Below, one piece after another: positions 27,560 to 32,281 of a stretch of DNA of 32,281 bases (positions are counted from its first letter, which is position 1; each line of letters starts with the position of its first letter). A program made the translations under genes and the position numbers. The notes beneath the pieces are model-generated. The model ran no database searches. It was not told the origin of the DNA and saw nothing but the letters and a program-made list of their open reading frames with translations. Origin of the DNA: Salpingoeca rosetta (lineage: Eukaryota; Protista; Choanoflagellata); the NCBI GenBank assembly GCA_033442325.1, contig JAWQFM010000004.1, forward strand, positions 969,494-1,001,774, in the 5' to 3' direction.

Positions 27560-28561
27560 TTATATGCTCAACTTTGTGGCAACCTCCCCGGCCAACTCAC
27601 GGCCCTCCGCATCTTCCTCCTTCTCCAATGCTTCACCCTCTTCGCCTTGTTCCTGGTCCTCTTCGCCCTGTTCCTGGCCCTCCTCCCCAACATCACCACC
27701 TTCAACATCCTTCTCTGCGTCACCATCCCCTGCGTCATCATCATTATCATCATCATCGGCTTCATCGGCCCGCGCCGCCTCCTCTTGGCCGAGCTGTGTA
27801 AAGGCGTTGTATGTCATGGTCTTGCGCGACTGCGCCTCCTCCTGCAGCCGCTGGATGTACCTGTTTTGCGTCTCCACCATGTCTGCCGCGTTGTCGCAGG
27901 CCGCATACAGCTCCAGCAGCTCGTTGTTGAGCGAGAAGAAGGCGTGGCCCCACTTGAACTTGCCCAGGAGCTCCTCCGCCTCCTCCTTCAAGCCCACGAT
28001 CCAGCAGCACGCCGCAAACGCCTCCACGCACGACAGCTTCAGTGGGCGGCCGTAGTTGACCGGGTTGGCCGCCACCAAGTACGGCAGCAGCCGGTTGTGG
28101 TACGCGCGCATCTTGTGGAAGGGCACCTTGTCCAGCTCTGCCCAGGAGCAGTCCACGACGGCGATGCCGTTCTCAAGCACAATGTCGCGATCGCGCGGCG
28201 ACACGCACGCCGTCGCATTTGGGCTGAGCACAATGCCGTTGAAGGCGGACCGCGTCCGCAGCTCGCGGCACAGGCGCATGCGAATCAGCTTGCGCCCAGT
28301 GCAGCGGCGCGGGTCACACTGCGCAAAGTCCCACATGGCCAGATCAAGCACGCGCGGCGTGCCATCCTCATCGGTGTGACCCCGCAGCACAATGCCGTCT
28401 GCGTGATGACCTTCCTCTCCGCCGTGCCGATCCCCATCAAGGTCGCCAGGCCGGCCGTCGTGTGCCCACGTTCGGCGTTCCCGCCGTCCACCACCACCAC
28501 CACCACGTCCACCACCACTGCGTCCACCGCCACCGCGTCCGCGGCCTCCTCGCCTGCCCAT
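27560..28561 (-). CDS. TSR3: 18S rRNA aminocarboxypropyltransferase Tsr3; intronless
   Basis: LAMWDFAQCDPRRCTGRKL, AVVDCSWA, RLLPYLVAANPVNYGRPLKLSCVEAFAA, FKWGHAFFSLN, acidic C-tail. Likely start MGRRGGRG at 28561. Confidence 0.96.
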   Translation of the reverse strand: MGRRGGRGRGGGGRSGGGRGGGGGGRRERRTWAHDGRPGDLDGDRHGGEEGHHADGIVLRGHTDEDGTPRVLDLAMWDFAQCDPRRCTGRKLIRMRLCRELRTRSAFNGIVLSPNATACVSPRDRDIVLENGIAVVDCSWAELDKVPFHKMRAYHNRLLPYLVAANPVNYGRPLKLSCVEAFAACCWIVGLKEEAEELLGKFKWGHAFFSLNNELLELYAACDNAADMVETQNRYIQRLQEEAQSRKTMTYNAFTQLGQEEAARADEADDDDNDDDAGDGDAEKDVEGGDVGEEGQEQGEEDQEQGEEGEALEKEEDAEGRELAGEVATKLSI

Positions 28562-29128
28562 CCTCGTCTTTGTGCGCGTGTGCCTGCCTCGTCTTACGGA
28601 AGTTGAATGCAAAAGAAGTGTAAGTGCTTGCGGGGATATTTTCGCTTGACATTTCAGGTTCATATCTTGTGTCATACACTCGCACTCATCACACGCACTG
28701 ACACACACACACACACTCGCACATACACACACACTCGCACATACACACACACTCGCACATACATTCACACACACAGACTCACACACACTCAAACACACAC
28801 ACACACACATTCACGCACACATACACATACAAACTCACACATCACGCCGTCAAGCCGCTCACCTTTGGGTTTTTACGAAGCTGACCGTAGTAGATCAGCA
28901 GGTACCCAACAACCTGTAAAACGGGGGAAGGGAGGGGGTGGGATCAAAGAGAAAAAAACAAGGAAGAAGGGGATAGTAGGGGTGCTTCACATGCGAGCCA
29001 CACGTGCAAGCTGGTGTGTCGTGTGTGTTGTGTGAGTGTTAGGGGAGGGGGGGGGGTATGTGAGTGGGAGTGGGGTGAGAGCGCGAGGAGGTGAGGAGAG
29101 AAAGAAAGGGAGCGCGCTCGTCTGTTCT

Positions 29129-29239
29129 CTGCTGTCGACAATCGTTGGCAACAGCAACCTCGAAAAATCGCAAGTTTGGAAGATTTGTGAAAACCTTCAA
29201 CAAAATTCGGCAAGATCTCGACGATGATGAACGCGTGCA
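29129..29239 (-). ncRNA. candidate Fanzor omega-RNA scaffold 3' part / element right end
   Basis: Non-microsatellite segment directly downstream of the nuclease ORF. It holds two imperfect hairpins (29160-29221 and 29130-29156). Confidence 0.5.
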
Positions 29240-29993
29240 NNNNNNNNNNNNNNNNNNNNNNNNNNNNNNNNNNNNNNNNNNNNNNNNNNNNNNNNNNNNN
29301 NNNNNNNNNNNNNNNNNNNNNNNNNNNNNNNNNNNNNNNNNNNNNNNNNNNNNNNNNNNNNNNNNNNNNNNNNNNNNNNNNNNNNNNNNNNNNNNNNNNN
29401 NNNNNNNNNNNNNNNNNNNNNNNNNNNNNNNNNNNNNNNNNNNNNNNNNNNNNNNNNNNNNNNNNNNNNNNNNNNNNNNNNNNNNNNNNNNNNNNNNNNN
29501 NNNNNNNNNNNNNNNNNNNNNNNNNNNNNNNNNNNNNNNNNNNNNNNNNNNNNNNNNNNNNNNNNNNNNNNNNNNNNNNNNNNNNNNNNNNNNNNNNNNN
29601 NNNNNNNNNNNNNNNNNNNNNNNNNNNNNNNNNNNNNNNNNNNNNNNNNNNNNNNNNNNNNNNNNNNNNNNNNNNNNNNNNNNNNNNNNNNNNNNNNNNN
29701 NNNNNNNNNNNNNNNNNNNNNNNNNNNNNNNNNNNNNNNNNNNNNNNNNNNNNNNNNNNNNNNNNNNNNNNNNNNNNNNNNNNNNNNNNNNNNNNNNNNN
29801 NNNNNNNNNNNNNNNNNNNNNNNNNNNNNNNNNNNNNNNNNNNNNNNNNNNNNNNNNNNNNNNNNNNNNNNNNNNNNNNNNNNNNNNNNNNNNNNNNNNN
29901 NNNNNNNNNNNNNNNNNNNNNNNNNNNNNNNNNNNNNNNNNNNNNNNNNNNNNNNNNNNNNNNNNNNNNNNNNNNNNNNNNNNNNNNNNNNNN
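29240..29993. other. assembly gap (754 N) covering the expected RuvC-II/zinc-finger/RuvC-III region
   Basis: Run of N. Confidence 1.
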
Positions 29994-32281
29994 GGTCACG
30001 CGGTCCCTCACCACGCGCAGCTGCTGCCGGTGCCGCCGTCGCGCGGCTGCCACGTCGCCTTCGCCCCGGGCTTCGCCCTCCTGCACCGCTACTTCCAGGA
30101 GGTCGGCATCAGCACGGATGTCATTGGCGTTCCTGAGAAGCATGCGCAGCTCCTCGATGGCGTCATGCGCGATGGACACGGTCCCAGACGCCGTCCACAG
30201 CGTGAATGGCACGCGGACGCCTGGGTCAATGGACACAACACCGCCACGTCTCTCGCGCAGGAGAGCGTTGCGCTCCTTCATGCGCAGAAGTCGCCGCCGC
30301 TTTCGCAGCCGCCGCCGCCAGTCCAGGTGCGCCGCATGTCGCTCTCGTGCTGCCTGAAACTCTGCCTCTGCTTCCTGTGTCTGCTTGTCTATCGCCTTGG
30401 CCCGTCTCAGCCTCACCCACCGCCTGCGCGCCTCCCTCGCCTCCGCTTGCAACCGCCGTGCCACCTCGCCCATCTTCCGCTCCCTCACACGTGCCTTCTC
30501 CTCCAACGCCTGCATGGCCATGTCCCCGCCGCCATGTTCCTCGCACTTTGCACGTGCCTCTTCCTCCTCCTCCACCTCTTGCAGGCCGTCGTCGCACCCT
30601 GCCAGCACAGGTCTCTCAACCTGGAGCAAGCTTTGCCCGAGCGTTCCCACGTCATCAGGTGCTCCTCGGGTGAAGTTGGAGGCCACACATATGTGGTACC
30701 TCCCCGACGCATCCAATGTGAACCTTGCCTGACCGCGAAAGTCTTTCGCAGCGGGTAGCGGCTCTGCTACACGGAGCTTGTCCACGCACATCACCGCAAA
30801 CATGCCCCTCGTTTGCTTGAGATTCACGGCATCCACGGGGATGGTGTTGCGCGCTGCCTGCCTACTCATGTGGAACTTGAATGTGTCGTTCTCCTCCTGC
30901 CGCTGCTGTTGTGTCTTCAGGGCCGCGTGCTCCTCTGCGAGCGCCCTCCTGCTTGGCCGCGTGCTCCTCTGCGAGCGCCTCCTGCTTGGCCGCGTGCTCC
31001 CTCTGCGAGCGCCTCCTGCTTGGCTGCGTGCTCCTCTGCGAGCGCCTCCTGCTTGGCCGCGTGCTCCTCTGCGAGCGCCTCCTGCTTGGCCGCGTGCTCC
31101 TCTGCGAGCGCCTCCTGCTTGGCCGCGTGCTCCTCTGCGAGCGCCTCCTGCTTGGTCGCGTGCTCCTCTGCGAGCGCCTCCTGCTTGGCTGCGTGCTCCT
31201 CTGCGAGCGCCTCCTGCTTGGCCGCGTGCTCCTCTGCGAGCGCCTCCTTCCGGCTCTTGGCAGCCCTTCTGCAGGCCTGAAACTCCTGTAGCTCATTCAG
31301 AAGCATTGTTTTCAGGGCCTGCAGCGCGTGCAGGAAGTGGCGGTGCTTCGTGTCAGCCACCACCTGCTTGTCCTTCAGGCTGCGCACGGCCCTGTCATGC
31401 TCCACTGGATCGAGGAGGTCGTCCACCACCTCCTGTACCTCGTCTCGCTCGCGCACCGCTGCCTGTAACTCATCATTCAACTTGCGCAGCTGTAGCAACG
31501 ACGCCCTGGCCTTTGCGAGGTCTGGCAGTGGTGGTAGTGGTGGCAGTGGTGGCAGTGGTGGTGAGCTTTGTGTCTGCCCCGACTGGGGTGCCTTTTGCTT
31601 CTGTGTCTGCTTATGCTTCTGCTTCTGCTTCTGCTGTTGTGGCTGTGGTTTGCTCTGTGACGTCTGGCGACAGCTGCGCTTGTCATGGCCCGATTGGCGA
31701 CACACAGTGCACCTGCGCGGCTTGCTCTTTGCCTTCTTTGTCGCAGGGCCAGGGGCATCGTCACTTGGCGCGTCGTCGTCCTGGTGGTCGCCATCCAATT
31801 CGTCATCGCCAAGGTCACCGGCGCCATCGACCTGCGGCAGCTGCAAGGGCGGAAGCATCTTTGCTTTCTTCGACGGCTGCTGCTGGTGTTGTGTGCAGGC
31901 TGTGGTTGAGCCCGTTGGACTGGTATCCTGGCCGCAATCGCCCGAGCACGCCTTGTCGTCCCCCTGGCTTTGCAACCGCAGCAGCAACAACACTGCGGGA
32001 GATACCGGTGAGGAGCCCGGTCTCTTGCTTTGCTTCTTGGGTGGTGGTTGCTTTGACGCTGCGTGTGCCTGGCGATGCGCTGACGCCGCAGGCTGGCGCG
32101 TGCTTGGCTTCTTGGATGGTGGCGGTGGTGGTGGTTGCTTTGGCACTGCGTGTGCCTGTCGATGCGCTGACGACGCAGGCTGGTGCGTGCTTGGCTTCTT
32201 GGATGGTGGTGGTGGTGGTGGTGGCTGCAGAAGTTGCTCAAACTCCTCTTTTAAGTGCTGCTGACGCTGTGCTGCCTCGTC
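29994..32281 (-). CDS. Fanzor2 / IS607-TnpB-like RNA-guided endonuclease (partial: 5' end beyond window, 3' end in gap; two +1 C insertions at ~30945 and ~31000)
   Basis: RuvC-I motif GGVVSIDPGVRVPFTLW (catalytic Asp codon 30225-30227). Upstream WED-like segments FKFHMSRQAARNTIPVD and LRVAEPLP...ARFTLDASGRYHICVA. Downstream helix ...RRRHRQQLRVVRDRVT. The frame is open from 32281, and removing two extra C's joins it to the RuvC frame. Confidence 0.8.
30921..31247 (-). repeat. ~10 tandem 33-bp coding repeats (EALAEEHAAKQ)
   Basis: The + strand unit ctcctctgcgagcgcctcctgcttggccgcgtg repeats contiguously with no spacers. Confidence 0.95.
32043..32226 (-). repeat. 87-bp (29-aa) tandem duplication, QPPPPPPSKKPSTxQPAxSAHRQAHAxxK
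   Basis: gatgcgctgacg recurs at 32074 and 32161 (period 87). Confidence 0.85.

What the first reader, a model, noticed from the sequence alone, without database searches (positions are those of the whole stretch)
29994..32281. Oversized Fanzor2/TnpB-like RNA-guided nuclease in a choanoflagellate-like genome
Seen: the motif VVSIDPGVRVPFTLW, preceded by F.F...+....TIP and E.LP.....RFTLD..GRYHICV segments and followed by a basic helix ending RVVRDRVT at the gap. Established: this order matches the WED-RuvC-I-helix layout of IS607 TnpB/Fanzor2 (consensus vvalDPGvRtf), which are eukaryotic OMEGA nucleases usually about 500 aa. Inference: the reconstructed ORF already has about 760 codons before the gap, lacks its start, and the gap can hold up to about 250 more. 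The protein could therefore be roughly twice the usual size and may be a distinct, possibly domesticated, subfamily.
Basis: partly seen in the sequence, partly recalled or inferred. Interest (0 to 1): 0.92.

Follow-up and report, generated by a model that had tools for sequence, protein, structure and literature searches.

The report
Damaged copy of known Fanzor2 element
This is a gapped, internally damaged copy of SAl-1, a TnpB-like (Fanzor2) RNA-guided nuclease element of the choanoflagellate Salpingoeca rosetta first described in 2013. The new points are that its reading frame is about three times longer than published and that it sits next to an XPG/FEN-type nuclease gene, not a transposase.

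Summary
The motifs are real and lie on the minus strand of window 29994-32281. The gene is a Fanzor2, but not a new one. Its protein and 3' end match SAl-1 of Salpingoeca sp. ATCC 50818 (Bao and Jurka 2013, published as 400 aa).

An ungapped paralog on contig C14 supplies what the window's gap hides:
- Pro at the canonical RuvC-II site, with the relocated Glu;
- a CxxC...CxxxxC zinc finger;
- RuvC-III (RDANAARN).

All of these are intact. The best solved-structure match, by sequence and by fold, is mimivirus Fanzor2 (9B0L).

A TnpB-type N-terminal motif (RKVRIYPS...YNAAV) lies about 620 codons upstream of the WED-C motif, in the same stop-free frame. The conceptual product is about 1,330 aa, against 380-450 aa for compact relatives.

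"Domesticated" is not supported. There are four near-identical copies plus one 3' fragment, and all share a sharp right end. The window copy lacks about 166 nt, which shifts the frame, and it is bounded by assembly gaps.

In passing: each Fanzor2 family examined here has an XPG/FEN-like nuclease gene upstream on the same strand. No serine recombinase was found in the assembly. Other readers of this scan noted the XPG link on other DNA.

The parts
28596..28691 (-). Terminal 96 nt of the element's right end, ending ...TTGCATTCAACTTCCGT at 28596. The host Tsr3-like gene's ATG lies 34 nt further on, on the same strand.
   Evidence: This stretch occurs exactly five times in the genome at 99-100% identity. 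All copies diverge completely right after ...CCGT.
28596..29239 (-). Distal part of the long (about 960 nt) 3' untranslated region: a pyrimidine-rich tract, a 51-nt exon-like piece (28863-28913) and a GT-rich microsatellite.
   Evidence: It is 94% identical to the C14 copy.
29240..29993 (.). Assembly gap (N). By comparison with C14 it hides about 134 codons (RuvC-II, zinc finger, RuvC-III), the stop codon and about 300 nt of 3' untranslated sequence.
29994..30887 (-). Reading-frame piece 2 (298 codons): the C-terminal part of the WED domain, a charged helical insertion of about 150 aa (about 30240-30683), RuvC-I (the D of SIDPG at 30225-30227) and the following helix.
30888..31000 (-). Lesion of the window copy. 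It has a net deficit of about 166 nt relative to C14. This removes the conserved REC/WED segment (...EIRDCTLTDAYARKIADVH...) and shifts the frame. It lies inside or next to the 33-nt repeat array, so misassembly is possible.
30921..31248 (-). Tandem array of 33-nt units, 9.9 copies, encoding the 11-aa repeat EALAEEHAAKQ.
31247..31522 (-). Helical, probably coiled-coil, segment of the REC insertion (DLAKARASLLQLRKLNDEL...).
   Evidence: Related stretches of the model are long helices.
31670..31711 (-). CX2CX4HX4C pattern (CTVCRQSGHDKRSC), zinc-knuckle-like.
   Evidence: This is a pattern match only: Pfam zf-CCHC does not score it.
32040..32226 (-). 87-nt repeat, 2.1 copies, encoding proline-rich units (PPPPPPPSKKPSTHQP.S.AHRQAHA...).
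30917..32281 (-). Reading-frame piece 1 (455 codons), all of it inside the giant REC insertion. It is open at the window end, which coincides with the start of an 11.4-kb assembly gap on contig C4.

Best explanation
The window holds the 3' two-thirds of one copy of SAl-1, a Fanzor2 element of Salpingoeca rosetta. Fanzor2 proteins are eukaryotic TnpB-family RNA-guided nucleases. The family's intact form, read from the paralogs, is a conceptual protein of about 1,330 aa, laid out as follows:
- a lysine-rich and poly-Q N-terminal extension of about 300 aa, probably carrying nuclear import signals;
- a TnpB-type WED/REC start (RKVRIYPS...YNAAV);
- a REC insertion of about 520 aa holding proline-rich repeats, a CCHC-like knuckle, coiled coil and 11-aa repeats;
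- the rest of WED;
- a second helical insertion of about 150 aa;
- a RuvC domain with the rearranged Fanzor active site. In the numbering of the 761-aa C14 frame this is D550, Pro647 at the canonical Glu site, the relocated E699 and D736, plus a zinc finger at C706/C709/C724/C729.

By analogy with tested Fanzor2 enzymes, the protein would bind an RNA transcribed from the element's 3' part and cut matching DNA next to a short motif. This step is inferred, not shown.

The unit shared by the two copies with an assembled 5' side is about 5.9 kb. It runs from ...TAAACTGAGGG to ...CAACTTCCGT and contains only an XPG/FEN-like nuclease gene and the Fanzor gene, with no transposase.

As assembled, the window copy is defective. 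It is missing 166 nt, has a frameshift, and is bounded by gaps.
For: Identity with the published family: the SAl-1 protein and the 3' end of the SAl-1 DNA in the supplements of PMC3627910 match the C14 copy. The species table of that paper lists two Fanzor2 families for Salpingoeca sp. ATCC 50818. The window's gene is on record in GCA_000188695.1.

Family membership:
- Pfam PF07282, E 9.6e-14, over the cut-off.
- Best solved relative by sequence is mimivirus Fanzor2, 9b0l, E 2.9e-12. Its validated D324 and E467 align to the D of SIDPG and the E of CDEAWTSKTC.
- Best Foldseek match is also 9b0l, E 8.6e-10, followed by Cas12f and TnpB.
- D, E, D and four Cys are invariant across 28 relatives.

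Long frame:
- The C29 copy has 983 codons without a stop.
- The N-terminal motif matches the profile of relatives (hhalign probability 94%, E 1.3e-7).
- In the 615 codons between that motif and FKFHMSR there are 0 stops in the linking frame against 15 in each other frame. The chance of no stop is about 6e-8.

Mobility:
- The terminal 96 nt occurs five times, with unrelated flanks after ...CCGT.
- C14 and C29 differ at 13 of 2,056 aligned coding bases, 7 synonymous and 6 not.
Against: - No RNA evidence.
- No single assembled copy is intact over the full length. C14 has a gap and poor sequence at its 5' part. C29 has two 1-nt deletions. C4 and C27 are cut by gaps.
- Pfam does not recognise the N-terminal motif as PF12323.
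- No structured RNA stands out near the stop codon or the right end (z-scores +0.9, -1.4 and +0.8), and there is no Rfam match.
- Substitution-based support for coding in the insertion is weak. The synonymous excess between C27 and C29 is mostly CAA/CAG changes inside poly-Q.
- The left end rests on only two copies.
Confidence: 0.88

Rival explanations
1. The long frame is not one protein. The low-complexity stretch is intron or untranslated sequence, and the real product is a Fanzor2 of ordinary size, about 400-700 aa, as published.
For: The published model is 400 aa in one exon. NCBI's annotation of the window copy calls two short products of 263 and 290 aa. No long gene model was found in the protein collection. 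Repeats of 3, 33 and 81-87 nt can keep a frame open without selection. The substitution test is weak.
Against: A 400-aa product starting at MCVDKLRV would lack the N-terminal WED/REC half that every relative has. The TnpB-type N-terminal motif is in the same frame 620 codons upstream. There are no stops in that frame against 15 in each other frame. An intron of about 1.6 kb that happens to be stop-free and in frame is unlikely.
Confidence: 0.25
2. It is a distinct, domesticated host gene derived from a Fanzor.
For: The protein is very large and has added domains. No transposase is present in the unit or in the assembly.
Against: There are four copies plus a fragment at 93-100% identity, with a common sharp end and unrelated flanks. 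Copies carry frame-breaking lesions. Catalytic residues are intact. It is a published repeat family.
Confidence: 0.05
3. The XPG/FEN-like gene and the Fanzor are one spliced fusion gene, as other first readers of this scan proposed on other DNA.
For: They are on the same strand. In C14, by my manual reading, only about 96 nt separate the XPG-like stop (L005:4079-4081) from the first ATG of the Fanzor frame (L005:4177), and the Fanzor frame is already open upstream of that stop. The pairing recurs in three Fanzor2 families.
Against: My splice reading of the XPG-like gene ends in an in-frame stop. That reading was checked only against the relative P0050. There is no transcript evidence, and the published models are not fusions.
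Confidence: 0.25
4. The window copy's deletion and frameshift are assembly errors in a 33-nt repeat next to gaps, and the real copy is intact.
For: The lesion lies in or next to the tandem array. The copy is flanked by gaps of 754 nt and 11.4 kb. Sequence next to the C14 gap is visibly poor: 80% identity there against 96-99% elsewhere.
Against: The missing segment extends about 60 codons beyond the repeats into unique sequence. Slippage-type misassembly does not readily explain that.
Confidence: 0.35

Closest known systems
SAl-1, a Fanzor2 family of Salpingoeca sp. ATCC 50818 (Bao and Jurka 2013, PMC3627910)
   Same: It is the same element. The published 400-aa protein and the published 3' end of the DNA match the C14 paralog. 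The paper gives three copies with only the right end defined, which fits what I see.
   Different: The paper models a 400-aa single-exon protein starting at an internal Met. Here the frame runs about 1,330 codons and includes a TnpB-type N-terminal motif. I also find a fourth copy, a 3' fragment, a candidate left end and an XPG-like gene inside the unit.
Mimivirus Fanzor2 (ApmFz2/ApmFNuc, PDB 9B0L; Jiang et al. 2023, PMC10530073)
   Same: It is the best solved relative by both sequence and fold. It shares the rearranged active site: a non-acidic residue at the canonical RuvC-II position, and a relocated Glu just before the TSKTC zinc-finger motif.
   Different: ApmFz2 is 520 aa, lies in an IS607 element with a TnpA serine recombinase and defined ends, and has a mapped guide RNA. 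SAl-1 is about 2.5 times longer, has no TnpA, and no guide RNA could be located.
Compact TnpB/Fanzor2 relatives from metagenomes and giant-virus contigs (P0002-P0029)
   Same: They are 36-43% identical over the RuvC half (E down to 1e-43), with shared LLPxFxTSxM, ICDEAYTSKTCGxCG and DRDxxAARNILL motifs and the same N-terminal K.R.YP...YN.CV motif. One (P0011) lies beside a giant-virus major capsid gene. Another (P0019) lies beside a MerR-type fragment typical of IS607 TnpA.
   Different: Most are 380-600 aa, and none of the three contexts read has an XPG-like neighbour. SAl-1 carries two large insertions, of about 520 and about 150 aa, at positions where they have about 50 and about 20 residues.
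ISDra2 TnpB (PDB 8H1J, 8EXA)
   Same: Same WED-REC-RuvC-zinc finger layout and RuvC fold.
   Different: ISDra2 TnpB has the canonical RuvC-II Glu, is about 400 aa, and belongs to a bacterial IS200/IS605 element with a Y1 transposase.

Membership tests
TnpB/Fanzor superfamily | RuvC-I aspartate in a DPG-type motif | tested here: met
   SIDPGVR lies in the window (30195-30239). Its D is invariant in 28 relatives and aligns to D324 of ApmFz2.
TnpB/Fanzor superfamily | [TS][TS]xxC zinc finger (CxxC...CxxC) followed by the RuvC-III RD motif | tested here: met
   These lie in the gap in the window, so they were read in the C14 and C29 paralogs: TSKTCGRCG...CPHDSC...GRDANAARNI. Pfam PF07282 scores 51.7 bits against a cut-off of 26.3. 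The four Cys and the D are invariant.
TnpB/Fanzor superfamily | N-terminal WED strand plus first REC helix (Pfam HTH_OrfB_IS605 region) | tested here: inconclusive
   Profile comparison matches RKVRIYPSRVQRQWLNTYF...YNAAV to the relatives' N-terminus (probability 94%, E 1.3e-7). Pfam PF12323 itself does not score it. This part lies outside the window, in the C29 and C27 copies.
TnpB/Fanzor superfamily | RuvC fold | tested here: met
   In the AlphaFold2 model of the C14 C-terminal 507 aa, the RuvC part has pLDDT 85-97. Foldseek's top hits are Fanzor2, Cas12f and TnpB, with E 8.6e-10 to 1e-6. The WED part was modelled poorly.
TnpB/Fanzor superfamily | A guide (omega) RNA encoded at the 3' end of the element | tested here: inconclusive
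   There is no fold more stable than shuffles near the stop codon, in the 3' untranslated region or at the right end, and no Rfam match.
TnpB/Fanzor superfamily | RNA-guided DNA cleavage | not testable with these tools
   This needs biochemistry.
Fanzor2 clade | Rearranged RuvC-II: Pro or Gly at the canonical Glu position and a conserved Glu about 45 residues downstream | tested here: met
   VVLLPRF (Pro647) and CDEAWTSKTC (E699), 52 residues apart. The E is invariant in 28 relatives and aligns to ApmFz2 E467. The criterion is from PMC10530073.
Fanzor2 clade | Closer to Fanzor2 and IS607-type TnpB than to Fanzor1 | tested here: met
   Fanzor2 9b0l is the top hit by sequence and by fold. The Fanzor1 structure 9cf1 is only rank 49, at E 0.011. 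The family is placed in Fanzor2 by Bao and Jurka. I built no tree.
IS607-type element | TnpA serine recombinase in the element | tested here: not met
   The 5.9-kb unit holds only the XPG-like and Fanzor genes. There is no PF00239 match anywhere in the assembly at E <= 0.1, while 12 of 14 control genomes give one. Assembly gaps limit this negative.
IS607-type element | No terminal inverted repeats and no target-site duplication | tested here: met
   The left end TAAACTGAGGG... and the right end ...CAACTTCCGT are not inverted copies of each other. The flanks of C14 and C29 show no duplication. This rests on two copies only.
SAl-1 family | Sequence identity with the published consensus protein and 3' terminus | tested here: met
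   The published protein, from MCVDKLRV... to ...LAPVPAP, and the DNA ending ...TTGCATTCAACTTCCGT match C14. The window piece is 100% identical to C14 over 297 aa.
Inactivated TnpB derivatives (TldR-like) | Loss of RuvC catalytic residues | tested here: not met
   D550, E699 and D736 are all present in C14 and C29.
XPG/FEN1/EXO1 family (the upstream neighbour gene, outside the window) | XPG_N and XPG_I domains with the acidic active-site residues | tested here: inconclusive
   The SAl-1 neighbour itself scores below cut-off (XPG_I E 0.0039). Its relative P0050 (E 1.3e-10, 35% identity) passes XPG_I at 29.6 bits against 24.9. A low-confidence model of P0050 finds EXO1, FEN1, GEN1 and Rad2 as top folds at E 0.006-0.05. 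Atlas leads are all in the same clan. The neighbours of the other two families pass XPG_N and XPG_I outright.

The most novel reading that the evidence does not exclude
In Salpingoeca rosetta, Fanzor2 has become part of a two-nuclease module that lacks a transposase. An XPG/EXO1-type 5' nuclease gene sits directly upstream of, and is possibly fused to, a giant Fanzor2 with nucleic-acid-binding additions. The module would spread or maintain itself by RNA-guided cutting followed by resection-driven copying from an occupied locus (homing), not by IS607-type recombination.
Probability: 0.2. Interest if true: 0.8.

Novelty: already known. Interest (0 to 1): 0.35.

Why it matters
The element family has been in the literature since 2013, and surveys from 2023 mention choanoflagellate Fanzor2, so the basic call adds nothing new.

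Two things here are not in the searchable literature:
- The protein is probably about 1,330 aa, not 400. That would make it one of the largest Fanzor2 forms, with a zinc-knuckle-like motif and coiled coil inserted in the RNA/DNA-recognition lobe.
- Each Fanzor2 family examined in this genome is paired with an XPG/FEN-type nuclease gene, and no serine recombinase is detectable in the assembly. No paper in the library holds both "Fanzor" and "XPG".

If the pairing is functional, it would bear on an open question: what Fanzors do for their elements in eukaryotes.

Tried and rejected
RNA evidence:
- The look-up of sequencing runs found runs of the organism, including three raw RNA-seq runs.
- Disclosure: one local script alignment (C14 3' region against the C17 locus inside the sandbox) did span the equivalent GT-microsatellite of the C14 paralog.

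Guide RNA: folding near the stop codon, the middle of the 3' untranslated region and the terminal 114 nt gave z-scores of +0.91, -1.43 and +0.76. Rfam gave nothing.

Apparent dispersal of the last 170-bp stretch in more than 40 loci is only GT-rich microsatellite similarity. The unique terminal 96 nt occurs five times.

Segments shared 4-12 kb upstream between some loci partly belong to a multi-copy gene or repeat family. They are separated from the element by large gaps, so I could not decide whether the mobile unit is larger than 5.9 kb.

Other negatives or weak results:
- Pfam on the 983-codon frame gave no TnpB N-terminal domain.
- BLASTP between the SAl-1 XPG-like exons and the C2 XPG-like gene found nothing.
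- The search for a long annotated gene model found none.
- Cluster look-ups gave no organism names.
- Contigs of P0050 and P0051 were too short for context.
- The synonymous/non-synonymous test is suggestive for the RuvC half (7:6 against an expected share of about 22% synonymous). For the insertion it is dominated by poly-Q codon swaps.
- The SAl-1 knuckle is not scored by Pfam zf-CCHC. The SAl-2 knuckle scores 17.7 bits, below the cut-off.
- BLASTP against P0026, an 832-aa relative with its own long proline-rich N-terminal part, shows similarity only in the RuvC half.
Full report
**Observation.**
The gene is on the minus strand.
- FKFHMSRQAARNTIPVD
- EPLPAAKDFRGQARFTLDASGRYHICV
- a charged helical stretch
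- VVSIDPGVRVPFTLW
- a basic helix ending RVVRDRVT at the gap

A second frame, 30917-32281, adds 455 codons and runs off the window end. The gap is N 29240-29993. The window is G000:C4:969494-1001774. Its end coincides with the start of an 11.4-kb gap on that contig.

**What the gap hides.**
The same protein piece recurs on contig C14 (100% identity over 297 aa) and on C29 (96%). The C14 copy is ungapped through the 3' half. After ...RVVRDRV it continues with DHLHRVVANYLVMSFRVVLLPRFGTSRM..., VVICDEAWTSKTCGRCG...CPHDSC...GRDANAARNILL and a stop. So the window's gap hides about 134 codons plus about 300 nt of 3' untranslated sequence.

**Family.**
- Pfam PF07282 (Cas12f1-like TNB domain) scores 51.7 bits against a cut-off of 26.3.
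- The best solved relative by sequence is mimivirus Fanzor2, 9b0l, at E 2.9e-12. Cas12f and TnpB follow.
- An AlphaFold2 model of the C14 C-terminal 507 aa has pLDDT 85-97 over the RuvC part. Its best Foldseek match is again 9b0l, at E 8.6e-10.
- In an alignment with 27 relatives, the invariant residues are D550, E699, D736 and Cys706/709/724/729, in the numbering of the 761-aa C14 frame.
- The canonical RuvC-II position holds Pro647 (VVLLPRF). The invariant Glu lies 52 residues later, just before TSKTC.
- This is the rearranged site described for Fanzors, where ApmFNuc D324 and E467 were validated (PMC10530073). Those two residues align to D550 and E699.
- The enzyme therefore looks catalytically competent, not TldR-like.

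**It is a published family.**
Bao and Jurka 2013 (PMC3627910) list two Fanzor2 families in Salpingoeca sp. ATCC 50818. Their supplements give SAl-1 as three copies with only the right end defined and a 400-aa single-exon protein. They also give the sequences.
- The protein, from MCVDKLRV... to ...LAPVPAP, matches the C14 copy.
- The DNA ends ...TTGCATTCAACTTCCGT, as all copies here do.
- The window's 290-aa product is on record in GCA_000188695.1.
- Saito et al. 2023 also mention Fanzor2 in choanoflagellates.

**Size.**
The C29 copy has a 983-codon stop-free frame. At its residue 310 it contains RKVRIYPSRVQRQWLNTYFAAATEAYNAAV.
- Relatives start their conserved part with the same pattern, K.R.YP...Q...L...G..R..YN.CV.
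- A profile comparison supports the match (probability 94%, E 1.3e-7). Pfam PF12323 does not reach it.
- Between this motif and FKFHMSR lie 615 codons with no stop in the linking frame. Each other frame has 15. About 16 are expected from composition, so the chance of none is about 6e-8.
- Relatives have about 50 residues there. SAl-1 has about 520: proline-rich repeats, an acidic stretch, a CX2CX4HX4C pattern, a coiled-coil-like segment and 8-10 units of EALAEEHAAKQ.
- A second insertion of about 150 charged, helical residues lies between ...YHICV and SIDPG.
- Upstream of the motif the frame stays open for another 300 codons, lysine-rich and poly-Q, back to a first Met.
- Joining C29 up to ...AVNLKQ (932 residues, first Met at 9) with C14 after it (407 residues) gives about 1,331 aa. 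About 1,030 aa of that runs from the TnpB-type start.
- Compact relatives are 380-450 aa.
- So "oversized" is supported at the level of the reading frame. Without transcripts I put about 70% on it being one translated protein.

**Copies.**
There are four copies (C14, C29, C4 = the window, C27) and a 3' fragment of about 460 bp on C17.
- C14 and C29 differ at 13 of 2,056 aligned coding bases, 7 synonymous and 6 not.
- All copies end at ...CAACTTCCGT, and their flanks are unrelated from the next base.
- The 5' side is assembled only in C14 and C29. There the similarity starts at TAAACTGAGGGTTTGA. That gives a unit of about 5.9 kb without inverted ends or target duplication.
- Every copy adjoins assembly gaps.
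- No copy is intact end to end as assembled. C14 has a 100-N gap and poor sequence at its 5' part. C29 has two 1-nt deletions after ...NLKQ. C27 is cut by a gap.
- The window copy has a net deficit of about 166 nt. This removes the conserved ...EIRDCTLTDAYARKIADVH... segment and shifts the frame. Because the lesion touches a 33-nt tandem array next to gaps, misassembly cannot be excluded.

**Not domesticated.**
Several near-identical copies, a shared sharp end, unrelated flanks and frame-breaking lesions in some copies are the marks of a young repeat family, not of a host gene.

**Relatives.**
The RuvC half is 36-43% identical to proteins from metagenomes (E down to 1e-43).
- One (P0011) lies beside a giant-virus major capsid gene and a VLTF3-like gene.
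- Another (P0019) lies beside a MerR-type fragment typical of IS607 TnpA.
- This fits the reported enrichment of Fanzor2 in giant viruses.

**The neighbour gene (outside the window).**
Inside the 5.9-kb unit, about 170 bp after the left end, starts a gene reading MGLTGYG...VIIVDETP...PGEADHQLAAM / intron / ...SSDSDMLLH...ILAGCDV.
- On its own it scores only weakly for XPG_I (E 0.0039). It occurs only at C14 and C29.
- An exhaustive search found two relatives. One of them, P0050, passes Pfam XPG_I over the cut-off and bridges my proposed exon junction.
- A low-confidence model of P0050 finds EXO1, FEN1, GEN1 and Rad2 as best folds, at weak E-values.
- Genome-wide scans show clear XPG_N/XPG_I hits 3-6 kb upstream, on the same strand, of the other TnpB-type hits:
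  - C2: XPG 2274374-2275016, TNB 2277755;
  - C8: XPG 1609760-1610941, TNB 1605078;
  - C12: XPG 275265, TNB 270283;
  - C7: a duplicate of the C2 XPG gene, next to a gap.
- Reading those loci shows that C8 and C12 are the published SAl-2, whose knuckle is CCKCGRLGHSQRQC, and that C2/C7 is a related family.
- No Resolvase domain is found anywhere in the assembly.
- No paper in the library holds both "Fanzor" and "XPG".
- Other first readers of this scan noted XPG-Fanzor pairs or fusions on other DNA of this genome. I had seen the gene before looking those notes up. I tested the pairing, but not the fusion.

**Mechanism.**
Shown:
- a TnpB/Fanzor2 fold with an intact rearranged active site;
- a very long open frame;
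- a multi-copy unit with a defined right end.

Inferred from tested Fanzor2 enzymes:
- the protein binds an RNA made from the element's 3' part and cuts DNA that matches the RNA's flank-derived end.

Not found:
- that RNA.

Speculative:
- the XPG-type nuclease helps process the break so that the element is copied by repair.

**Limits.**
There is no read evidence, no tree, and the left end rests on two copies. Gaps lie beside every copy.

Noticed in passing
L005:2900-4081 (C14:432899-434080); C29:228875-229397; L020:3374-4835 (C2); L021 (C8:1609760-1610941); L022 (C12:275265-275387); L023 (C7:1828473-1829115): An XPG/FEN/EXO1-type nuclease gene lies upstream of, and on the same strand as, each of the three Fanzor2 families read in this genome (SAl-1, SAl-2 and a C2/C7 family). 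In SAl-1 only about 96 nt separate its stop from the first ATG of the Fanzor frame. No paper in the library holds both 'Fanzor' and 'XPG'.
   Followed up: partly
window 28559-28596; L005:8667-8705; C29 and C27 equivalents: In all four full copies the right end lies 21-34 nt upstream of a host gene's start codon, on the same strand. The host genes are Tsr3-like in the window, DapF-like on C29, a signal-peptide protein on C14 and an MG-start protein on C27. This suggests either insertion preference for gene 5' ends or an outward-reading promoter in the right end.
   Followed up: partly
whole assembly G000: No Resolvase (PF00239) match at E <= 0.1 anywhere, so no IS607-type TnpA is assembled in a genome that carries several Fanzor2 families.
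   Followed up: yes
L005:2690-2715 and L008:7585-7610 (minus strand): About 20-40 nt upstream of the candidate left end, the otherwise unrelated flanks of C14 and C29 share a patch TGTCCAC(G/A)CCCA(G/T)GCAA. It could be part of a target site, or the true end could lie further out. With two copies it cannot be decided.
   Followed up: no
C17:404174-404640 (L018:4175-4640, minus strand): A fifth, 5'-truncated copy holding only the last 460 bp or so of the element. Identity rises from 93% to 99% toward the end, and it has the same sharp terminus.
   Followed up: partly
window 28863-28913 (minus strand): Inside the 3' untranslated region, a 51-nt piece (GTTGTTGGGTACC...CCCAAAG) is framed by a polypyrimidine tract plus CAG on one side and GTGAGC on the other, like a small exon. 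It is conserved in all copies, including the C17 fragment.
   Followed up: no
L021:4740-4871 (C8) and window 31670-31711: Both published Salpingoeca Fanzor2 families carry a CX2CX4HX4C motif, but at different places in the protein: inside WED in SAl-2 and inside the REC insertion in SAl-1. Only the SAl-2 one approaches the Pfam zf-CCHC score (17.7 bits against a cut-off of 20.8).
   Followed up: partly
L009:6100-8686 (C14:426099-428685); C27:414236-417039; C4:1013467-1015242: A further 1.8-2.6 kb segment, 93-98% identical, lies 4-9 kb upstream of three of the four copies, beyond assembly gaps. Parts of it resemble exons of a multi-copy gene family. The mobile or duplicated unit may therefore be larger than 5.9 kb.
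   Followed up: partly
L025:8272-11728: One of the closest relatives of the SAl-1 RuvC half (P0011, 575 aa) lies directly after a giant-virus major capsid gene on a 187-kb metagenomic contig.
   Followed up: no
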